Of a stretch of 64,000 nucleotides of DNA, positions 1-9,493 are shown piece after piece. Made by a program: the position numbers and the translations under genes. The notes beneath the pieces were generated by a model. That model had not been told where the DNA came from. It saw nothing but the letters and a program-made list of their open reading frames with translations, and ran no database searches. The DNA comes from Macrostomum hystrix. Its lineage: Eukaryota; Animalia; Platyhelminthes. The first letter of the stretch is position 1, and the number at the start of each line of letters is the position of its first letter. Location of the stretch: positions 1,736,001-1,800,000 of the forward strand of contig CATNEN010000029.1 of NCBI GenBank assembly GCA_950097015.1, written 5' to 3'.

Positions 1-405
1 AGACACTGGAACCATGAGATACTGCAACCATGAAACACTGGAACCATGAAACACTGGAACCATGAGGCACTGGAACCATTAGACACTGGAACCATGAGAC
101 ACTGGAAACATGAGATACTGGAACCATGAGACACTGTAACCATTAGACACTGGAACCATGAGACACTGTAACCATTAGACACTGGAACCATGAGACACTG
201 TAACCATTAGAACTGGAACCATGAGACACTGTAACCATTAGACACTGGAGAGATCAGAGACGGGAGTGCTGTGATTGGAGAGTACATTCGAGAGATGAGA
301 CATGGGATTAAGAGGCAAGCAAGAAATCAGATAGGGTAGAGAATGTGTTGAAAGGAGCTCCGAGGGCCGCATCTGGTCCAGTTGCCAGAGATTTGACAAC
401 CCATG
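1..405 (+). mobile_element. Right part of a degenerate hAT (Charlie/SPIN-like) MITE containing a 16-bp minisatellite (AGACACTGGAACCATG, 1-248)
   Basis: GAGCTCCGAGGGCCGCATCTGGTCC at ~355-380 is nearly identical to the right end of the intact MITE at 32638-33408; a decayed TIR (GATTTGACAACCCATG) ends at ~405. Confidence 0.7.
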
Positions 406-444: not shown

Positions 445-1202
445 CTTCTGAGATTGCCGGCCAAGGCGCTGTCGGCTTCAGGCACACCCAGCTGCAGGCC
501 AATCCGATGCCAGTGCCGGGCATAGGCAGCCAATTGCGGGCTGTCCGGGCCCTCATTGTCAATGCAGCGAATGCCAAAGAGGCGTCTGTGCAGCAAGGCG
601 TAAGCAACAAATGCAGTCTGCACTGTGCGCATATCATCTGTGTTAAACACTGGGACGCCAACCACTGAGTTAGCCGCGTGAGTGTGCGCTCGACGAACAG
701 CAATACTGGACTGGCCAGCCTGACAGGCGGCGTTTGCCGGATCTCCCAAATGCCAGGCGATCACGTGACGTGCGGTGGAAACGTAGCGACGCAGCGCTTT
801 AATTGGCTGATCGGATCGGCCCGTTGCTGCCAGAACAGAAGACAGCGGAGCGAGCGATAAGCCAGTCATGAGGGAGAACAGTAGAGCGGCCATGCAGGAG
901 GCAAAGTTATCCGCCAGTAAGTGAGTCGCTGCGCGTTGGTCGGCCTCAGATAGTTGACTTAGCTCTGGGATTTTAGTAGGCTTGCCGTCTTCCGTCGAAG
1001 TGCTGAGTTGCCGAGCTTCATCAAATGGATTCTTATGGACATTATTACCTTCTGCTGAAGTGCTAGGTTGCCGAGCTTCATCAAATGGATTATCATGGAC
1101 ATTATTACCTTCCGTTGAAGTGCTACGTTGCCGAGCTTCATCAAAGGGATTCTCATGGACATTGTTGCCTTCCGTTGAAGTACTCTGTTGTCGAGGAAAC
1201 AT
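445..1202 (-). CDS. First coding exon of an MPAB/Lcp (DUF2236, ER-bound/rubber oxygenase catalytic domain) family protein; the gene continues left of the window
   Basis: aaaATG at 1202. Motifs TGRS..KALRRYVSTARHVIAWH, VRRAH, DDMRTVQTAF and HWHRIGLQLGV follow the pattern I recognise from animal DUF2236 proteins. Donor AAG|GTGCGA at 445/444. Confidence 0.75.
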
Positions 1203-1455
1203 TTTATATTAAGCGAAAGACATTTTTTTTAATACCGAGTAACAGCAATTTTGTTAATGCTTTTTAACGTTTTATTTCAATCGCAGTAGCGTCAATGATG
1301 CGGAAGAGCGAATGCACGTTTAACTGAAAAGCAGACGAGAAAACTTTATTATTATATTATTCCACATCACTAGCAAATGAGGATTTAAATTATGATCTAC
1401 TATTATTATGATTTTTTACTAGCCTATAAGCGAAGATGCAAAACGGAAGCTATAA

Positions 1456-1597
1456 CAATGTTCGCGAATCACGGGGTGAGCTAGCAGATATGCGCACGCT
1501 AGATCACACGTTAAATACGCGGAGATTATTCTACCTGCCATTTTCTCTGTCAATCACTTTATTTATAATTACAGTGTGACAGCAAGTGGGCAGGTGG
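1456..1597 (-). ncRNA. Box H/ACA snoRNA, diverged paralog (copy C)
   Basis: Hairpin CCTGCC/GGCAGG + CTGTCA/TGACAG; H box AGAATA (1527-1532); hairpin CGCG + GTGA.CTAGC/GCTAG.TCAC; ACA at 1459-1461. Both boxes lie 14-15 nt from the pocket tops, and pocket sequences are identical to copies A and B. Confidence 0.8.
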
Positions 1598-2764
1598 TTA
1601 TTCTATCGACCCCACACTCTAATTATAAGTACAAGATCAAACCAAATGTAACAGAAACCGATAAAAACGTATCCTTTTCATTGGAAAATGACTTCTAATT
1701 AATTTTTGAGCAGAAGATCCGAAAAATGCTTTTTTACTAATAAACCAACCTTTTTTGCTTACAAAACAACAAACAGGAAATAATGAAACACTTTACTTAG
1801 CAACTAAATCTTAAAAGTTTTAAGTTTATCGTGCTTGCAGTGTTTTTCAGAGAAACTTTCAGCTACGTGTATTTAGGATTAGCAAAATAAATATTAGTCA
1901 AGCCGGATGTACATGAACTATTGCGGAAATGAAGCTAACGCTCTATAGGTATCGAGTCTTAGCAGTATAAACAACAAAAAGCGAATTGCAATTTCAACGA
2001 CTAATCATACACAGTACAGAACCTACTATCTCCATAAGTGGAATGACCCTAATCATAAAGTGAATTAAAAATAAAGATAAAAATACAACTAATAGAAAAA
2101 TCTGTCAGCTAAAATGAACAGATAAAACAATACAAAAATTCCAGCTATCAAATGTTGAGTTCAAAGAATGTGTGCGACTTAATTGATTGGTTTCAATCAA
2201 CGTCACACAGAGTAGCACTAGTGTAGCAACGAGATAGTAAGTTAAATTCATCTTTAATTCATTTAAACGAAAGAGAGACAAAAAACTGACAAAGAAAGAA
2301 GTAAACAACGAAGCAGGGGTAGGTGAAAGCAAACATGTACAAGCTGGTATGTAGTAAATAATATGCAGAGGACACAACAACGCGTTATATATTGCCTCAT
2401 CGGGAGAGTCATTTTAGGTTTGTTAGAGATGATAAAAAGTCTGTAAACTAAAGAACAAACATGCTTTAAACTGTAAAGCAACAAACTAGCAAATAAGCGG
2501 TTATAAAGCAGATAGTTAAAAACAAGAACAATATGCGGCAGGCAAAATAACAAATTAGAAATGATAATTAAATCAGACCATTGGCAAAATGACTTGGCAG
2601 AGGTATCAGTATTTAATAACTACAAGCTAATAACAGGGTTAAGATTCTACAGAAAACTCTAAATAAGGAAATGATTGTCCAAGAAGCCTGCGGACTTTCT
2701 ACTTCAGTTAGAAATAAGAATGATGTCAACTGATTGATAATACAATTACGTTTTATATTTCTAT

Positions 2765-5700
2765 CTATCTTTTTCTGCGAGTAGACTTCTGAAATTTCCG
2801 CTGCGGATTAAATATATTTTCGCCGGCCTGTGGTTGAAGCAGTGGCTGTTGTGTGGTGAATGAAAAAGTAGGAATCGTCTGCTGTGGCTGCGGCTGACCA
2901 GTGAATGCAAAGCTGGGAGCCGCCGGCGGTTGTAACTGTGCCGGCGGCTGAGCTGGCATGCCAAAGCTAGGCGCAGATGGCTGCTGCGTTTGCTGGTGAG
3001 TGGAAAAGCTAAAGCTTGGCATTGCCTGTTGCTTACTTAAAAAGCCAAAGCTTGGCGCACCCGGTGTCTGTTGAGTTGACAGGCCAAAGCTTGGTGCACC
3101 TGATGTCTGTTGGGTTGACAGGCCAAAGCTTGGTGCACCCGATGTCTTTTGGGTTGACAGGCCAAAGCTTGGTGCACCCGATGTCTGTTGGGTTGACAGG
3201 CCAAAGCTTGGCGCACCCGGTGTCTGTTGAGTTGACAGGCCAAAGCTTGGTGCACCCGATGTCTGTTGGGTTGACAGGCCAAAGCTTGGTGCACCCGATG
3301 TCTGTTGGGTTGACAGGCCAAAGCTTGGTGCACCCGATGTCTGTTGGGTTGACAGGCCAAAGCTTGGTGCACCCGATGTCTGTTGGGTTGACAGGCCAAA
3401 GCTTGGTGCACCCGATGTCTGTTGGGTCGACAGGCCAAAGCTTGGTGCACCCGATGTCTGTTGGGTTGACAGGCCAAAGCTTGGTGCACCCAGAGTCTGT
3501 TGGGTTGACAGGCCAAAGCTTGGTGGACCCAGAGTCTGTTGGGTTGACAGGCCAAAGCTTGGTGCACCCAGAGTCTGTTGGGTTGACAGGCCAAAGCTTG
3601 GCACACCAGATGGCTGAGGCTTCTGTTGGTTTGCAAGGCCAAAGTTTGGCCCAGCAGATGGTTGAGACTGCTGTTGGTTTGACAGGCCAAAGCTTGGCCC
3701 AGCAGATGAGTGAGACTGCTGCTGTTGCTGGTTAAAAGCAAAGTTAATGCCTGAAAGAGATTGCGGTTGTTGGTCTAAGAAAGACGAACCAGCAGCCGAA
3801 GAAGTTTGCTGCGGACGGTTTTCAGACGAACCGGTAGAAAAGAGACTTGTTGGAGCAGTCGTTTGCTGCTGCTGACCTGAAAAAGAGAAACTGGTTGTTG
3901 CTGCTGCTTTAGCGCCCAATGAGACAAGAGAGCCTGGTGCGGATGGCACTTTACTGTCTGAGTTCAACAGCTGCGACTGCTGCTGCACCTGTTGGCCAAC
4001 ACGGCTAAAAAGAGAGCCGGAGCCGGCTGAAGCGGAACTTTTCTCTGAAGTTTGAACCATAGGCATGAAAGAGAAGGCAGCAGCAGTCTTCTGTTGCTGG
4101 GCTGGCTGTTGATTTTGCTGTTGCGAGCTCTGTTTGGATTGCGATTGTGTCTGACCGGAGCTAAAACTAAAAAGACCAAAACCACCTGATGAGGACGCTG
4201 ATGCAGTGGAAGCTACGTTTGTTTGAGACGGTGTTATGTTAGCGACAGTCGATACTACCGGTGCTTGAGTGAGACCGGAGCCGAATGGCTGATTAACAGT
4301 GGATGAAGTAGTCGCAGCGGAAGACGAGGGAACTGATTGCGTTGTAGCCGTGTGAGCCGCCGTAGTCTGTTTAAACAAGGTAGCACCAAAGAGCACAGCC
4401 CCGGCTGGGGTTCCGCTGGCGGAGGTGACATGTGGAGCGTCAGACTGGTTGAACAGGCTCCCACCACTGGCTGGCGTAGAGCTAGTTGACGAGATAGTCG
4501 GGCCGCCACCAAAGCCACCAAATGTAAACGATGATTTACTTCCGGAGATTGCTGATTCGGGCACGGAAGGTGCAGCAGAGGCGGCAGTCGTTGTTGCTGC
4601 TAATAAAGAGGGTTCAGTAACCATCGTACCAGCTTTGAAGTTAAACAGGGAAGCTACAGTGGCGGGTGTTTGACTAGTCAGATCAGGCGGTGGTGTTGGT
4701 TTTTCACTATGAGAGCCGCTATTGGCAGTGGCAGCGGTGGCGCCCACGCCGGAGGAGTTGTTGCCGACGCCTTGAAATTTGAAACCACCAAGATTTGTCT
4801 CACTGGTACTGGCTGCCGACTGGAACAGCGACGGCAAATGAGGGCTTCCTGACTGCGCAGTTGTGGTTGTACTAACGGCACTAGCCGAGGAAGCAGTTAC
4901 CATGCTAGCTGAGGCACTAACAGAGAGCGATGAGGCGCTCGTCACTGAGCTAGGCGGCTGGATGCTTGGGAAAGCTGAGAAACCAGCCAGAGAGGAGCCA
5001 ATAGTTTGCGGTGGCTGCGTCAATTTCGCCTGACCACTAGTAGTAAAATAATTTGCCGACTTTTCAATGGCAGCAGATGACTGAGTGAAAGAGGGCAATG
5101 AAAATGCTGGACCATCTTTTGCTAGGTTTGATAGGCCGTCTGCGAAAGACTTTGCTGCCTGGCTGAGTGTTGTGGGCACGGGGATTTGCTTAACGGGAGC
5201 GGCCGATGCAGTCGAAGATGCAGGTTTGGACACAGGTGAATTCAATAAAGTTTGGCCAAAAAATGAAGGAAGTGGAGCAGCTGCAGCATTTGAAGAAGGC
5301 CCTGTTTTAGTGGTCGCCGTAGGGGCTGCTAGCGACTGCAAGCTCACAGACGGCGTTGATTGCCCAGTAGGCAGAGAAGCTGATACTGGTGCTGTTGTCG
5401 GCTGGTTGGTGGCAGGTTTCGGAGGAGTTGCTGTTGACACGGAACTGCCCGTTGTTAAAGCGGCCGCTGGAGGCTGCTGGAGAAGCGAAATTAGCGGCGC
5501 GGTGGAAGCAGCCGAGCCTATTTTAGGTGTTGAGAGGGCAGGCGCTGGAGCCAGTGCAGTCGAGGAAGCGGCGCAGGTGGAGACAGAGGCTGTCTGTGCT
5601 ATGTTGCTCAGCAGTCGCCTGATGCGATCGCGTCGAGTCTCTCGGACCTGGCGCTCGCGTTGGCGCGCCTGCCGCTGAGCCACAAGACGGGACGTAGGGC

Positions 5701-6931
5701 TCTCTGCCTGGGCTGTTGCCATGCCAGTCAGAGACGTGTCATTTAGCAGGCGCCTGTACTGCTGCTGCCTCTCAGAGCGTTCTAGACTGGCTACTAGGGC
5801 TGTGACGGTCATTCTGGGCCGCTGCGGCGACTGACGGGGCGAAGTTAATGAACGTGACGCCGAAGGCGGTCTTACCACCGAATGATTTTGTAATGGGGTA
5901 GGCGACGAAGAAAGTGACATTACCGATGGGCCTTCGTTAAGCGCATTCACAGAGGCAATATGGTTATTAGCGGCTTCGCTTGGTATTGACGCAGCTGGCT
6001 GAGATTGCGACACGGAAATGTCAGTTTGGCAGGACTCGGATCGGCTGCTAACGCGAATTGCACCTGCGTTGCTTAAGATGGACGACACAGGCAGCAGGCC
6101 GGCAGAAGGCGAAATTGACATAAGGCTTGGCGATTGCTGCTCCACAGGTGTCACTATCGCCAATGGCATTGCCAGCTGATGACGCGGTGTAGGAGGACCT
6201 GTCTTAGCGTTGTCAGGCAGTACCTCGCTCAGCGACGTCGCTTTAAATGTTTCATCGCTAAACCGACGCCGCTTAGAATCTCGACGACGCTTGTGATTTT
6301 TTAGGTGATCTGGAGTCGGCGGATCCGACGACGCAGCCACTCCGCTGTCTACACCAGCAGACTCATTGTCGCTACAGTCAAGATCGACATCGGCGTCGTC
6401 GCTGAGCAGTTCGCCGGCATTAGCTGTGACGGCTTCGGCAGTTGATTCGGCCGGAGTCGTCGCGGAAGAAGGCGACGAAGAAGTCATTTGTGAGGCGCTA
6501 CGCTTGCGCGATTCGAGGATGCGCAGGCCGCGCAAGACGCTTTCGCGTTCGTCTAAATCGCGCGCTAAAGCGAAATTGGCGCCAGTAAACGCGGAGGCAC
6601 CGCTGCTACTGGCGCTAGAAGGCAAAAGTTGGCGACGGCGGTGGTCAAACGTGCCGGGCGCCTGTCGGACAGTCAGTACTGATGATGCAAGCGGGGGTGG
6701 CGGCGGCGGTGGTGGCAGAAGCCTCCGTTGCTGAAGCTCGTCGTTATAATTATTATTGGACATTGGACTGCCGACGGGCGCTGGTGGAACGAGTAAGCGT
6801 ACGCCGCTGCCGCCATTGGAACTGGTAGGTATCCCCGGCACACCGGGAGATGCCCCGGCCAATGCTGCAGCGGCAGCCGCATCGGCTGACCGCTTCGAGA
6901 AGCTGTAGTAGCCTTTAGCGTGACGGCGCAG
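2765..6931 (-). CDS. POM121/Nup153-like FG-repeat nucleoporin, one large exon
   Basis: Open frame from the acceptor at 6932 to TAG at 2765. Ser/Thr/Gln-rich with many FG/FSF/SFG motifs; basic NLS-like segments (RKRS, KRRRDSKRRRF); basic C-terminus RKFQKSTRRKR. No RanBP2 zinc fingers and no TM helix are visible. Confidence 0.8.
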   Translation of the reverse strand: MRRHAKGYYSFSKRSADAAAAAALAGASPGVPGIPTSSNGGSGVRLLVPPAPVGSPMSNNNYNDELQQRRLLPPPPPPPPLASSVLTVRQAPGTFDHRRRQLLPSSASSSGASAFTGANFALARDLDERESVLRGLRILESRKRSASQMTSSSPSSATTPAESTAEAVTANAGELLSDDADVDLDCSDNESAGVDSGVAASSDPPTPDHLKNHKRRRDSKRRRFSDETFKATSLSEVLPDNAKTGPPTPRHQLAMPLAIVTPVEQQSPSLMSISPSAGLLPVSSILSNAGAIRVSSRSESCQTDISVSQSQPAASIPSEAANNHIASVNALNEGPSVMSLSSSPTPLQNHSVVRPPSASRSLTSPRQSPQRPRMTVTALVASLERSERQQQYRRLLNDTSLTGMATAQAESPTSRLVAQRQARQRERQVRETRRDRIRRLLSNIAQTASVSTCAASSTALAPAPALSTPKIGSAASTAPLISLLQQPPAAALTTGSSVSTATPPKPATNQPTTAPVSASLPTGQSTPSVSLQSLAAPTATTKTGPSSNAAAAPLPSFFGQTLLNSPVSKPASSTASAAPVKQIPVPTTLSQAAKSFADGLSNLAKDGPAFSLPSFTQSSAAIEKSANYFTTSGQAKLTQPPQTIGSSLAGFSAFPSIQPPSSVTSASSLSVSASASMVTASSASAVSTTTTAQSGSPHLPSLFQSAASTSETNLGGFKFQGVGNNSSGVGATAATANSGSHSEKPTPPPDLTSQTPATVASLFNFKAGTMVTEPSLLAATTTAASAAPSVPESAISGSKSSFTFGGFGGGPTISSTSSTPASGGSLFNQSDAPHVTSASGTPAGAVLFGATLFKQTTAAHTATTQSVPSSSAATTSSTVNQPFGSGLTQAPVVSTVANITPSQTNVASTASASSSGGFGLFSFSSGQTQSQSKQSSQQQNQQPAQQQKTAAAFSFMPMVQTSEKSSASAGSGSLFSRVGQQVQQQSQLLNSDSKVPSAPGSLVSLGAKAAATTSFSFSGQQQQTTAPTSLFSTGSSENRPQQTSSAAGSSFLDQQPQSLSGINFAFNQQQQQSHSSAGPSFGLSNQQQSQPSAGPNFGLANQQKPQPSGVPSFGLSTQQTLGAPSFGLSTQQTLGPPSFGLSTQQTLGAPSFGLSTQQTSGAPSFGLSTQQTSGAPSFGLSTQQTSGAPSFGLSTQQTSGAPSFGLSTQQTSGAPSFGLSTQQTSGAPSFGLSTQQTPGAPSFGLSTQQTSGAPSFGLSTQKTSGAPSFGLSTQQTSGAPSFGLSTQQTPGAPSFGFLSKQQAMPSFSFSTHQQTQQPSAPSFGMPAQPPAQLQPPAAPSFAFTGQPQPQQTIPTFSFTTQQPLLQPQAGENIFNPQRKFQKSTRRKR
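3040..3700 (-). repeat. Coding 39-bp tandem repeat (PSFGLSTQQTSGA, ~14-17 units) forming the FG domain
   Basis: Unit GACAGGCCAAAGCTTGGTGCACCCGATGTCTGTTGGGTT on the + strand. Confidence 0.95.
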
Positions 6932-7157
6932 CTGAAATTAATAAAAAAAGTTTTTAAGTAGGCGAGAGGAATTTTTCTCCAGATCCGAACACAGACTGAA
7001 TGCAACAACTATAAGGCTAAAAAAAGACAAAAGACAACGAAAGGGGCACATGATCCACAGATGTGCACCGCAGTTTCAATCCAATGCCCTAGTTGTTAAG
7101 AACAAACAGGCAACAGGCAAAGTGGCAATGAAGACTAGCCACTATTCCTGGTCAAAA

Positions 7158-7163
7158 TTTATT
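7158..7163 (-). terminator. Likely RPS3 polyadenylation signal AATAAA
   Basis: TTTATT on the + strand, ~125 nt downstream of the RPS3 stop, followed by U/GU-rich sequence. Confidence 0.6.
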
Positions 7164-7288
7164 TTATCTCATGCCTTCTCGACGCTTTTAATGCACGCGC
7201 ATCTGCTTACGCCAGAACTGGCAACTAAACAAAAGCGATTCAATGTTCGCGTCGCATCCCAATCCGAATAGTTAGAATATGATCAAAT

Positions 7289-8411
7289 CTAGGCCGGCGC
7301 CGTGATTTCAGCCTGCGGCTTCTGCTGCTTATTCTCCGAATATGGCTGCGCCGGCACCGTCTGCTCCTTAGGATCGGCGATGGTCACGTGATCGGGTAGC
7401 GGCTTCCTCGAGGGGCCACCACCGGCGGGGGCCTCCCAGTTCTGCATGATCTTCACCTGGATGCCGAGCACGCCCTGACGCAGCTGGACGTGTCGCACGG
7501 CCCGATCGATAAAGCGAATCGACGGCTCACCGCTGTGGATCATGAAGCCTTCGGTGAACTTCATCGATTTGGCGCGCTGGCCACGCAGCTTGCCGCTGAC
7601 GATGACTTCGGCGCCCTTGGCGCCAGACTCGATGATGAATCGCAAGACGCCGTAGCAGGCGCGACGGACAGCGAGGCCACCGAGCAGCTTGTAGCGCAGA
7701 GACTCGGCCTGGAAGGTGGCGCGTTCGAAAAAAATTTTAGATAGCGGCTGAATAGGATTACAGGATGATTAACAGCTGATTACGGGATGATTAACAGATG
7801 ATTACAGGATGAAAAATAGCTGATAACAGGATGACTGACAACTGATTACAGGATGACTGACAACTGATTACAGGATGACAAATAGCTGATTAAAGGATGA
7901 CTGACAACTGATTACAGGATTACTGATAGCTGATTACAAGATGACTGACAGCTGATTACAGGACGAACGATAACTGACTTCAGAATGGAATAGAGTAAGA
8001 GAGTTCTCTGTTTATTACAGGATGGAAGGGCAAGTGAGAGAGCTCTGTCAAAGTGAAAAAACCACTTAAAAGCAATGCGAAAAATTTTTACCGACTTACC
8101 TGAGCAACGGCGGACAGTCCGCGATTGGCCATCTTCTCAGCGTAGATCTCAATCTGGCCATCCTCGAAGCCGAATCGTTTTTGAAGCACGGCGGTGAGCT
8201 CGCGCACCTTGCGGCCCTTCTCGCCAAGCACACTCTGCGTGCGGGTGGCCAGCACAATCACCTCGATCTTGGCCGGGGTGACGCGCAGCTCGATGCCAGA
8301 GTAGCCATCTTCGGCCAGTTCGCGCTTGAGGAATTCGTCTAGCTCGGCGCGGAAGACGCCATTCGCTACAAATGCGCGCTTCTTGCTAGTTACAGCATTT
8401 TTAGTTGCCAT
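7289..8411 (-). CDS. RPS3: 40S ribosomal protein S3 (uS3), 243 aa; exons 8411-8100 and 7708-7289
   Basis: [31 protein letters not shown]...RGLSAVAQ|[24 protein letters not shown]; canonical GT-AG phase-0 intron 8099-7709. Confidence 0.98.
7756..7978. repeat. ~22-23 bp minisatellite in the RPS3 intron
   Basis: GCTGATTACAGGATGACTGACAA units, ~10 copies. Confidence 0.85.
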
Positions 8412-8485
8412 GGTGCTACTGGTGCGGCTGCGGAATTAGAAGCGAAATTGAGAAATATTGAGTCATCTTACTACTACAACATTAA

Positions 8486-8647
8486 AACTGTCTGTGTGTC
8501 ACGGGGTGAAATCAGGATAGGAGCAAAGTTTATTTGAACACTGATTCACACGTTAAACACACTATACAGATGCTCTACCTGTTAAAATCTCTGAAATCAG
8601 CTCTGCAAGCTGTAATATGCTTAGCTGGTTCAGCAAGTGAACAGGCA
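8486..8647 (-). ncRNA. Box H/ACA snoRNA (copy A)
   Basis: Hairpin 1 CCTGTT/AACAGG + CTGAA/TTCAG; H box AGAGCA (8571-8576); hairpin 2 GTGTGT/ACACAC + GTGAATCAG/CTGATTTCAC; ACA at 8489-8491; 14-15 nt pocket-to-box spacing. Confidence 0.8.
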
Positions 8648-8713
8648 TCTAAATCATAAAATATAAATATTAAACTTGATTGATAGGCTAGAAGCAGCTC
8701 TTTTGTCAGTTGC

Positions 8714-8875
8714 TTTTGTCTGTGTGTCACGGGGTGAAATCAGGATAAGAGCAAACTTAATTTGAACACTGATTCACACGTTAAACACACAGTACAGATG
8801 CTCTACCTGTTAAAATCTCTGAAATCAGCTCTATAAGCTATAATATGCTTAGCTGGTTCAGCAAGTGAACAGGCA
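8714..8875 (-). ncRNA. Box H/ACA snoRNA (copy B, tandem duplicate of A)
   Basis: Nearly identical to copy A, with differences only in the apical regions and hinge; H box 8799-8804, ACA 8717-8719. Confidence 0.8.
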
Positions 8876-8934
8876 TCTAAATTATAAATAAGTAAAACAC
8901 TAAATACAACAGAAAAATATAATCTAATGGGCAT

Positions 8935-9297
8935 TATAATAATAATAATTGCAGGAGAACTGCGGGCAGTGGTACATCATTTAGTTACACTTGACCTGCA
9001 GCCAGTGAGGAGGCAATTCTGCCCATTTTGCCAACTCCTGAGCACACAAGCACACAGATACTCTACGCAGGCATAAGCTCACACAGGTGTGTACATCTGC
9101 CCTGACTTTCTCATTGTCAGGCAGTGTACATTTCACTGTGCCTTGGAGGTTGGCCCTCAAGGGCGTAAATTGCATGACAAGCCCCCAAGCCTTCTCTCCG
9201 CGGCTGGACCCTAAATAAATGTGGCCTCACTGTGGAATCAAACTTAGTGACCATGGTGCGAGAGGCAAACACAATAACCGCTCTGCCACTGACCCTC
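8935..9297 (-). mobile_element. tRNA-derived SINE, family 1
   Basis: Reverse complement aligns with 18647-18955 (A box TGGCAGAGCGG, degenerate B box, internal CCTGAC/GTCAGG hairpin); (ATT)n tail. Confidence 0.75.
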
Positions 9298-9493
9298 TAT
9301 ATGAAAATGTTTGTAAGACTAAAAAAATACAAACAAATACTATATAATCCAATTAATAACTTTTAATAACTTCTTATGCGATAATTATACTCAGTTATAA
9401 AAACTAAGTCTATAGTTGCTTTATTTGTGTTTGTGATAAGATACTAATATATTGCTATTATGTCAAGTTGCCATTTTGATATGGACACTGGCT

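What the first reader, a model, noticed from the sequence alone, without database searches (positions are those of the whole stretch)
445..8900. Candidate trans-spliced operon RPS3 - nucleoporin - oxygenase, with paralogous H/ACA snoRNAs ahead of two of its cistrons
Seen: three same-strand genes in 8 kb. Strong splice acceptors precede each coding start (8428, 6932, 1324) and I found no matching upstream exon for any of them. One snoRNA family lies just upstream of two of the acceptors (ACA boxes ~60 and ~130 nt away). Established: flatworms use spliced-leader trans-splicing, and trans-splicing resolves operons. Inference: this is a polycistronic unit whose outrons or intercistronic spacers release guide snoRNAs, coupling a ribosomal protein, an rRNA-modification guide and a nuclear pore protein.
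Basis: partly seen in the sequence, partly recalled or inferred. Interest (0 to 1): 0.85.

Follow-up and report, generated by a model that had tools for sequence, protein, structure and literature searches.

The report
Trans-spliced RPS3 gene pair with snoRNAs
In this Macrostomum flatworm, the ribosomal protein S3 gene and the FG-repeat gene behind it both receive the spliced leader and have stayed neighbours through an old duplication, so they are probably a two-gene operon of a kind already known in this genus, with a real but ordinary family of guide RNAs lying just upstream of two of the genes.

Summary
Three minus-strand genes lie in 8 kb: RPS3, a 1,388-codon FG-repeat gene and a DUF2236/MpaB-like gene. 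A real H/ACA snoRNA family has three copies. Two sit in tandem with their ACA box 61 nt before the RPS3 acceptor. One sits 135 nt before the predicted gene 3 acceptor.

RNA contigs from four public runs carry the Macrostomum spliced leader joined at 8427 (RPS3, 4 of 4 runs) and at 6931 (FG gene). No cis-spliced 5' exon appears. The FG gene has no genomic ATG at its conserved N-terminus, so the leader's AUG must start it.

The RPS3-to-FG-gene adjacency, with a 340-390 nt spacer where no satellite is inserted, is kept in two ancient paralogous loci of this genome and in four M. lignano loci. That supports a dicistronic operon.

Co-transcription was not seen. No contig bridges the spacer, and RPS3 contigs are about 60-90 times deeper. 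Its spacer is 1.44 kb, and one M. lignano model gives it a cis 5' exon.

The snoRNAs show compensatory changes and are the only conserved non-coding DNA in the locus. Hairpin 1 fits 18S U303. Their expression and release from the outron are inferred.

Operons and trans-splicing are already published for this genus. Interest is moderate.

The parts
8711..8878 (-). H/ACA snoRNA copy A, the upstream member of the tandem pair
   Evidence: Covariance model gives 162 bits. It is 95% identical to copy B, and the two are 228 nt apart.
8483..8650 (-). H/ACA snoRNA copy B. H box AGAGCA; ACA at 8491-8489, 61 nt before the RPS3 acceptor.
   Evidence: Model gives 158 bits. It folds as hairpin-hinge-hairpin-tail with z = -2.8. 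Hairpin 1 pocket fits 18S U303.
8428..8429 (-). AG of the RPS3 trans-splice acceptor; the exon starts at 8427
   Evidence: Contigs of X5, X6, X7 and X1 end here. They run on into ATGCAATAAATTGAGTCTTC(GCAG), the reverse complement of the SL 3' part.
8100..8427 (-). RPS3 exon 1 (ATG at 8411; KH domain)
   Evidence: Pfam KH_2, E = 1.4e-13. Contig pieces cover 8099-8428.
7709..8099 (-). RPS3 intron, GT..AG, 391 nt, holding a 22-nt tandem array
   Evidence: A joint skipping 391 nt is seen in all 4 runs. The repeat is family D3.
7074..7708 (-). RPS3 exon 2 with its 3' UTR. Stop at 7291-7289, AATAAA at 7163-7158. Contigs end at 7154, 7107 or 7074.
   Evidence: Pfam Ribosomal_S3_C, E = 1.1e-23. Contig pieces.
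6933..7073 (-). Part of the RPS3-to-FG-gene spacer that no RNA contig covers
   Evidence: The depth figures are fully accounted for by the flanking contigs, so nothing lies here.
6932..6933 (-). AG of the FG gene's trans-splice acceptor; the exon starts at 6931
   Evidence: The X6 loose end ATGCAATAAATTGAGTCTTCGCA is at 6932. The X5, X6 and X7 contigs ending at 6932 each carry 22-23 extra letters.
2765..6931 (-). FG-repeat, nucleoporin-like ORF. It is open from the first base after the acceptor (CTG), with a TAA 9 nt upstream and no ATG until codon 57. It holds 17 copies of a 13-residue PSFGLSTQQTSGA unit at about 3040-3700.
   Evidence: Translation. 24 FG dipeptides. The N-terminus GYYSFSKRSA is invariant in four paralogues/orthologues.
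1453..1599 (-). H/ACA snoRNA copy C. H box AGAAUA; ACA at 1461-1459, 135 nt before the predicted gene 3 acceptor.
   Evidence: Model gives 140 bits. Fold z = -3.6. It is conserved in M. lignano at the same place.
1324..1325 (-). Predicted acceptor of gene 3 (ttttcag); not tested with reads
   Evidence: It is the only YTNCAG within 1.1 kb upstream of the ATG.
446..1323 (-). Gene 3 exon 1 (ATG 1202): three NPF-containing 20-residue repeats, then a DUF2236/MpaB-like domain. The gene continues in L005, about 9688-9219.
   Evidence: Pfam MPAB_Lcp_cat scores 24.4 bits against a cut-off of 23. The M. lignano orthologue is 73% identical and named a DUF2236 protein.

Best explanation
Shown:
- RPS3 and the FG-repeat gene behind it are both matured by spliced-leader trans-splicing.
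- The H/ACA snoRNA copies are evolutionarily constrained guide RNAs. Hairpin 1 is fitted to pseudouridylate 18S U303.

Inferred from the sequence:
- The FG gene has no start codon of its own at its conserved N-terminus, so it uses the AUG at the 3' end of the leader.

Inferred, most likely:
- The two genes are one transcription unit, started upstream of RPS3. It is resolved by cleavage and polyadenylation about 20 nt after the AATAAA at 7163-7158, then addition of the leader 140-220 nt further on at 6931.
- This makes it a dicistronic operon of the type already described in M. lignano.

Inferred for the snoRNAs:
- Copies A and B lie in the RNA that trans-splicing removes from the RPS3 precursor (the outron).
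- They are released from it by trimming, as intronic snoRNAs are released from introns.
- Copy C is released in the same way from RNA upstream of gene 3.

Whether gene 3 is a third cistron is open, at about one chance in three.
For: Trans-splicing and the missing ATG:
- One search shows SL-joined contigs at 8428 in 4 of 4 runs and at 6932. The RPS3 intron joint proves the runs are RNA. No other joint exists, so there is no cis 5' exon. RPS3 contigs of three runs run 50-85 nt past the AATAAA.
- the exact published M. lignano SL is present in more than 100 copies in this genome.
- the ORF is open from the acceptor. GYYSFSKRSA is invariant. The first codon after the acceptor is CTG here, TTG in the second locus of this genome, TTG in M. 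lignano type II and ATG in M. lignano type I.

Conserved adjacency:
- the same-strand RPS3-to-FG-gene adjacency is kept in six loci. The stop-to-acceptor spacer is 337-393 nt, or 927 nt where a satellite is inserted.
- The FG paralogues are only 30-34% identical, so the duplication is old.
- the published operon criterion is a repeat-adjusted spacer under 1 kb with the downstream gene SL-spliced.

snoRNAs:
- 92.7% of cells pair, against 29-44% when partners are slid. Nine pairs have changes on both sides.
- The H box and ACA are conserved, and the pocket-to-box distance is 14 nt.
- ten Watson-Crick pairs fit around 18S U303. Only 8 of 2,000 shuffled guides do as well.
- the snoRNA is the only non-coding segment of the locus still alignable between the two species.
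- other snoRNAs next door sit in ordinary introns, so splicing-linked release is the local habit.
Against: - No contig lies on 6933-7073, so read-through is not seen.
- RPS3 contigs are about 60-90 times deeper than FG-gene contigs (the tool warns that depth is a poor measure). This fits a separate weak promoter as well as it fits an operon.
- About 30% of M. lignano genes are SL-spliced but only about 15% lie in operons.
- No RNA covers 8429-8924 even though RPS3 is deep, so neither the outron nor the snoRNAs are seen. The libraries are probably poly(A)-selected.
- The RPS3 transcription start is unknown and could lie downstream of the snoRNAs.
- In C. elegans many snoRNAs, even intronic ones, have their own start sites.
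- In M. lignano the RPS3-upstream copy has decayed to a relic, so that position is dispensable.
Confidence: 0.58

Rival explanations
1. These are neighbouring but independent transcription units. Each gene has its own promoter and a short outron and is trans-spliced as a single-gene RNA. The adjacency is conserved only because segmental or whole-genome duplication and speciation copy neighbours together.
For: - No bridging contig exists, and contig depth differs 60-90-fold.
- Most SL-spliced genes in M. lignano are not in operons.
- Flanking genes such as Sina and the proteasome alpha subunit are also syntenic between the two type II M. lignano contigs. Synteny alone is therefore weak evidence.
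Against: - Between the RPS3 poly(A) signal and the acceptor there are only 140-220 nt. Apart from the poly(A)-signal region, this stretch is unalignable between species, which leaves little room for a conserved promoter.
- Both genes are kept adjacent in both ancient paralogous loci, although the FG proteins diverged to about 30% identity.
- The spacing fits the published operon mode.
Confidence: 0.3
2. The snoRNAs are independent genes, or a tandem snoRNA array with its own promoter, that happen to lie upstream of protein genes. They are not products of the outron.
For: - Copies occur as tandem arrays: period 228 nt here and 419 nt in M. lignano. Self-contained units would look like this.
- C. 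elegans snoRNAs often have their own start sites.
- No outron RNA is seen.
Against: - All intact copies in both species lie on the strand of the downstream gene. The acceptor-proximal copy of each array ends 60-180 nt before an acceptor.
- Nothing upstream of the copies is conserved.
- The four C/D snoRNA-like elements read next door lie in ordinary introns, and two earlier scan notes for this genome, not checked here, also report intron-hosted snoRNAs.
Confidence: 0.25
3. Gene 3 is not part of the unit. It has its own promoter and a cis-spliced 5' exon, and copy C lies upstream of that promoter or in its first intron.
For: - The M. lignano model P0003 begins with an exon (MTFKNVTCKQ) spliced onto the very acceptor that corresponds to 1324. 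That exon lies between the snoRNA and the acceptor.
- Here a GTAAAA donor-like site sits at 1419.
- The spacer is 1.44 kb here and 4.4 kb in M. lignano.
- Gene 3 is absent from type II loci.
Against: - P0003 may be an ab initio model with a 34-nt intron; the NCBI models start at the ATG.
- The acceptor matches the trans-splice motif TTTCAG.
- Much of the M. lignano spacer is satellite and inserted repeat.
Confidence: 0.4

Closest known systems
SL trans-spliced operons of Macrostomum lignano (Wudarski 2017 and Grudniewska 2018, analysed in PMC8629364) and of C. elegans
   Same: Same 35-nt leader and same acceptor motif. The genes are on one strand with a short spacer, and the downstream mRNA carries the leader.
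   Different: This pair is not individually described in the papers I could read. Co-transcription is not shown here. There is a single leader type, so nothing like the nematode SL2 marks the downstream cistron.
Flatworm spliced-leader 3'-terminal AUG used as the initiator (known from schistosome work; recalled from memory, not read here)
   Same: The leader ends in AUG and joins in frame to an ORF that lacks its own ATG.
   Different: Here the dependence is conserved in three of four gene lineages. In the fourth, M. lignano type I, a genomic ATG directly follows the acceptor.
Intron-hosted snoRNAs of ribosomal protein genes (for example vertebrate RPS3 hosting SNORD15; from memory)
   Same: A guide RNA for rRNA sits on the sense strand of a ribosomal protein gene, in RNA that splicing removes, tens of nucleotides before the 3' splice site.
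   Different: The host segment is an outron removed by trans-splicing, not a cis intron. Two copies in tandem would need a cut between them.
snoRNA clusters inside polycistronic, trans-spliced units of kinetoplastids (from memory)
   Same: snoRNAs lie between or ahead of trans-spliced protein genes on the same strand and are processed from long precursors.
   Different: That is a different eukaryotic lineage in which all genes are polycistronic. Here it is a metazoan with ordinary promoters and mostly intronic snoRNAs.
Yeast snR49, guide for 18S pseudouridine 302 (PMC5699541)
   Same: It is a box H/ACA guide aimed at a U in the same 5'-domain stretch of 18S. The predicted site here is U303.
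   Different: No sequence or Rfam similarity was found. Homology of the two sites was judged from memory of the yeast sequence and was not aligned here.

Membership tests
SL trans-spliced operon | Downstream gene's mRNA begins with the spliced leader at a 3' splice acceptor | tested here: met
   SL loose ends at 6932 on FG-gene contigs of X5, X6 and X7.
SL trans-spliced operon | Same strand, with an intercistronic distance under 1 kb after repeat adjustment (the criterion of PMC8629364) | tested here: met
   RPS3 stop to acceptor is 356 nt; mRNA 3' ends to acceptor are 140-220 nt. For the FG gene to gene 3 the distance is 1,440 nt, so it is not met without repeat adjustment.
SL trans-spliced operon | One primary transcript spans both cistrons | tested here: inconclusive
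   No contig lies on 6933-7073 in four assembled RNA runs. Contigs drop rare pre-mRNA.
SL trans-spliced operon | No independent promoter or start site for the downstream gene | not testable with these tools
   This needs CAGE or GRO-cap data.
SL trans-spliced operon | Third cistron (gene 3) carries the leader | not tested
An M. lignano model shows a cis 5' exon.
Box H/ACA snoRNA | Hairpin-hinge-hairpin-tail fold supported by covariation | tested here: met
   92.7% paired, nine pairs changed on both sides, and 0 of 500 shuffles reach the covariation score.
Box H/ACA snoRNA | H box (ANANNA) in the hinge and ACA near the 3' end | tested here: met
   AGAGCA, AGAAUA and AGACUA follow stem 1. ACA is invariant. 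The mature 3' end was not mapped.
Box H/ACA snoRNA | Pocket top lies 14-16 nt from the H or ACA box | tested here: met
   Counted on the sequence: 14 nt in both hairpins.
Box H/ACA snoRNA | Two-part complementarity flanking a U in rRNA or snRNA | tested here: met
   Hairpin 1 fits 18S U303 with 6+4 Watson-Crick pairs, 6+3 in the other lineages. Only 8 of 2,000 shuffled guides match as well. Hairpin 2 has no target in 18S, 5.8S, 28S, U1, U2, U4, U5, U6 or SL RNA.
Box H/ACA snoRNA | Stable small RNA of about 140-170 nt | tested here: inconclusive
   Depth is 0 over 8429-8924 in four assembled, probably poly(A)-selected runs.
Any Rfam snoRNA family | Score at or above the gathering threshold | tested here: not met
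   No match at gathering. Only a chance-level C/D hit at E = 1.2.
FG nucleoporin | Long disordered region with repeated FG motifs | tested here: met
   24 FG, 17 of them SFG in a 13-residue repeat. Paralogues have 39-46 FG, mostly FGQS.
FG nucleoporin | Homology to a named nucleoporin family | tested here: not met
   Pfam gives none. Word-based search gives none. A profile of four N-terminal domains against 1.84 billion proteins finds one hit only. Atlas scores are 0.77 or lower: Nup1, Nup60, POM121-like, mucin.
MpaB/DUF2236 oxygenase-like (PF09995) | Pfam score above the gathering threshold | tested here: met
   24.4 bits against 23, which is marginal. The orthologue is named a DUF2236 protein.

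The most novel reading that the evidence does not exclude
Trans-splicing doubles as a route for making snoRNAs in an animal. On this reading, H/ACA snoRNPs assemble on the outron of RPS3 and on the spacer ahead of gene 3. They are freed when the spliced leader is added. Output of an 18S pseudouridylation guide would then be tied to transcription of a ribosomal protein operon. The arrangement would predate the split of two Macrostomum species.
Probability: 0.4. Interest if true: 0.55.

Novelty: new variant of a known kind. Interest (0 to 1): 0.38.

Why it matters
- It gives a concrete, conserved and very highly expressed test locus for how flatworm operons are resolved. M. lignano can be made transgenic, so the locus can be manipulated.
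- It gives a clear natural case in which an essential-looking ORF depends on the leader's AUG.
- It raises a testable idea: outrons can host snoRNAs just as introns do.
- None of this overturns current views. Trans-splicing, operons and intron-type snoRNA hosting are all established.

Tried and rejected
- Rfam at gathering and at E up to 5 found no family for the snoRNAs and none in L015 or L005.
- The Rfam SSU family search of the own genome failed twice with a machine error. I located the rDNA with a primer-like pattern instead.
- The hairpin 2 target search on rRNAs, five snRNAs and SL RNA gave nothing convincing.
- For the FG gene, the word-based homologue search of residues 1-480 found nothing. 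The profile search found one protein. PDB gave only a low-complexity hit to lysostaphin. Atlas scores were low. The name 'nucleoporin' is therefore kept only as 'nucleoporin-like'.
- I hoped the M. lignano locus tags would encode transcription units. They number paralogues instead.
- A 13-nt word shared by the two type I spacers is at chance level: 11 of 100 shuffles match. The spacers are otherwise unalignable.
- Literature searches for snoRNAs in outrons or intercistronic spacers found no description in the papers checked.
- The spliced RPS3 protein was never joined. Its exons were searched separately by reference.
Full report
**What is there**

The window is G000:C29:1736001-1800000 of a 220-Mb Macrostomum genome. 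The published 35-nt M. lignano spliced leader (PMC8629364) occurs exactly in more than 100 places. The gene 3 orthologue in M. lignano is only 73% identical, so this is a congener, not M. lignano itself.

On the minus strand lie three genes:
- RPS3: ATG 8411; exon 1 ends at 8100; a 391-nt GT..AG intron holding a 22-nt satellite; exon 2 from 7708; stop at 7291-7289.
- A 1,388-codon ORF at 6931-2765. It is rich in S, A, T, P and Q, with 24 FG dipeptides, 17 of them in a 13-residue PSFGLSTQQTSGA array.
- A gene starting at ATG 1202. Its exon 1 carries three NPF-containing repeats and a marginal MPAB_Lcp_cat/DUF2236 match. It continues beyond the window.
- No ORF of 110 codons or more lies upstream on either strand between about 9000 and 17600, so RPS3 heads the cluster.

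**Trans-splicing**

- All four runs are RNA: each has the RPS3 intron joint, which skips 391 nt.
- In all four, the RPS3 contig stops at 8428 and continues with ATGCAATAAATTGAGTCTTC(GCAG). This is the reverse complement of ...CTGCGAAGACTCAATTTATTGCAT. The last G of the leader coincides with the G of the acceptor.
- The FG-gene contigs of X5, X6 and X7 stop at 6932 with 22-23 extra letters. Where printed, these are the same leader.
- No other joint touches either gene, so no cis 5' exon is assembled.

**The leader supplies the start codon**

- The FG ORF is open from the first base after the acceptor (cag|CTG CGC CGT...).
- A TAA lies 9 nt upstream, and there is no ATG until codon 57.
- The residues encoded right after the acceptor, R-x-x-A-x-GYYSFSKRSA, are invariant in four gene lineages.
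- The first codon after the acceptor differs among lineages:

| Lineage | First codon |
|---|---|
| This locus | CTG |
| Second locus of this genome | TTG |
| M. lignano type II | TTG |
| M. lignano type I | ATG |

The leader ends in ATG and joins in frame. Translation from the leader's AUG is the simplest reading.

**Operon or neighbours?**

For the operon:
- The RPS3 mRNA contigs end at 7154, 7107 or 7074. That is 4-84 nt past the AATAAA at 7163-7158 and leaves only 140-220 nt to the acceptor.
- The published M. lignano criterion is a repeat-adjusted spacer under 1 kb with an SL-spliced downstream gene. The main mode is near 100 nt.
- The pair is kept, on the same strand and in the same order, in six loci:
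  - this locus;
  - a second locus on C38, with a 337-nt spacer;
  - two M. lignano type I contigs, with a 393-nt spacer;
  - two M. lignano type II contigs, with a 927-nt spacer of which about 700 nt is satellite.
- Type I and type II FG proteins are only 30-34% identical. The duplication is therefore old and predates the species split.

Against the operon:
- The depth figures show that nothing lies on 6933-7073.
- RPS3 contigs are 60-90 times deeper than FG-gene contigs (the tool warns against ranking by depth).
- Most SL-spliced genes of M. lignano are not in operons.

I rate a dicistronic RPS3-to-FG-gene operon at roughly 0.6-0.65.

**Gene 3**

- The acceptor at 1324 fits the motif and is the only such site within 1.1 kb of the ATG.
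- It could not be tested with reads.
- The spacer from the FG stop is 1,440 nt here and 4.4 kb in M. lignano, where it contains satellite, an inserted element and the snoRNA array.
- Type II loci have a proteasome alpha gene there instead.
- One M. lignano protein model, P0003, starts with an exon that lies between the snoRNA and this acceptor and is cis-spliced to it.

Gene 3 as a third cistron is possible but unproven, at about one chance in three.

**The snoRNAs**

- Copies A and B are 95% alike and 228 nt apart. Copy C is about 70% alike.
- All three fold as hairpin-hinge-hairpin-tail, with z-scores of -2.8 and -3.6.
- They have an H box (AGAGCA or AGAAUA), an invariant ACA, and 14 nt from each pocket top to its box.
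- A covariance model finds only these three copies in the genome (this is a lower bound).
- In M. lignano it finds two or three tandem copies at the same place upstream of gene 3. It also finds a 17-bit relic of the 5' hairpin upstream of RPS3. The relic shares the A/B-type upper stem (GAGCCAGCU).
- Both positions were therefore occupied before the species split. The RPS3-side copy later decayed in M. lignano and was duplicated here.
- On seven distinct sequences, 92.7% of cells pair, against 29-44% when partners are slid. Nine pairs changed on both sides.
- The pocket strands are invariant while the stems covary.
- Between the species, the snoRNA is the only non-coding part of the locus that still aligns, apart from a dispersed repeat.

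Targets:
- The hairpin 1 pocket (5' CACUUG, 3' AGA...) fits ...UCU-U-N-CAAGUG at 18S U303.
- It makes 10 Watson-Crick pairs in A and B and 9 in the other lineages.
- It is the only such site in 18S, 5.8S and 28S. Only 8 of 2,000 shuffled guides reach as good a site.
- Yeast has a snR49-guided pseudouridine at 18S 302 (PMC5699541). That it is the same site is my recollection of the yeast sequence; it was not aligned here.
- Hairpin 2, equally conserved, has no convincing target in the rRNAs, U1, U2, U4, U5, U6 or SL RNA.

**How the snoRNAs are made**

This part is inferred.
- Every intact copy in both species lies on the strand of the downstream gene. The acceptor-proximal copy of each array ends 60-180 nt before an acceptor.
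- The four C/D snoRNA-like elements just after the gene 3 stop lie in ordinary introns. Two earlier scan notes for this genome, not checked here, also report intron-hosted snoRNAs.
- Release from the excised outron is therefore the economical reading.
- But the RPS3 start site is unknown, and no RNA covers 8429-8924.
- C. elegans snoRNAs often have their own starts.

**Comparison and novelty**

- Operons, the leader and its prevalence are published for M. lignano. Use of the leader's AUG is known from flatworms (from memory).
- Hosting of snoRNAs by ribosomal protein genes, and by polycistronic trans-spliced units in kinetoplastids, is also known (from memory).
- The possibly new element is an animal outron acting as a snoRNA host. 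I found no description of that in the papers checked.
- 'Nucleoporin' remains a label based on composition.

**Verdict**

The finding is a new variant of a known kind and of moderate interest.

Noticed in passing
L011 (G000:C15:9600-19200), minus strand: SL exon 131-165, U1 468-630, 28S 2647-6403, 5.8S 6767-6920, 18S 7643-9455: The SL RNA gene and a U1 snRNA gene lie inside the 11.6-kb rDNA repeat unit, in the spacer upstream of 18S. The same spacing recurs on contigs C15, C17 and C42.
   Followed up: partly
L005 8100-9220 (G000:C29, just left of the window), minus strand: Right after the gene 3 stop codon come four short GT..AG introns. Each holds a C/D-box snoRNA-like element (TGATGA ... CTGA), separated by tiny non-coding exons. 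This is either a snoRNA-hosting 3' UTR or a separate non-coding host gene. Rfam gives no match.
   Followed up: partly
L015 (G000:C38:7172001-7182000): This is the second RPS3-to-FG-gene locus of the genome. RPS3 there has more introns, filled with satellites. The FG paralogue has 46 FG motifs of FGQS type. No copy of the H/ACA family is present.
   Followed up: partly
window 8925-9318: A dispersed repeat with a tRNA-like start. ARAGORN finds no tRNA. It attracts many RNA contigs, 95-99% alike, at summed depth above 2,000. Pieces of it recur in the M. lignano loci, including inside the RPS3 intron.
   Followed up: no
window 1020-1195, minus strand: The N-terminus of gene 3 holds three 20-residue repeats, each with an NPF motif (...GNNVH-NPFDEARQ...). 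Pfam NPF is below threshold at 20.3 bits against 27.6. They are absent from the M. lignano orthologue.
   Followed up: no
window 1-240 with L005 9700-10000; window 7734-8019; L012 13450-14170: Introns and intercistronic spacers of this locus are repeatedly filled with short-period satellites of 16, 22 and about 40 nt. These inflate distances without disturbing the genes.
   Followed up: no
L010 6900-7750 and 7862-7972: In M. lignano, the decayed relic of the RPS3-side snoRNA lies next to a long opposite-strand ORF that looks like an inserted mobile element. It may have disrupted that copy.
   Followed up: no
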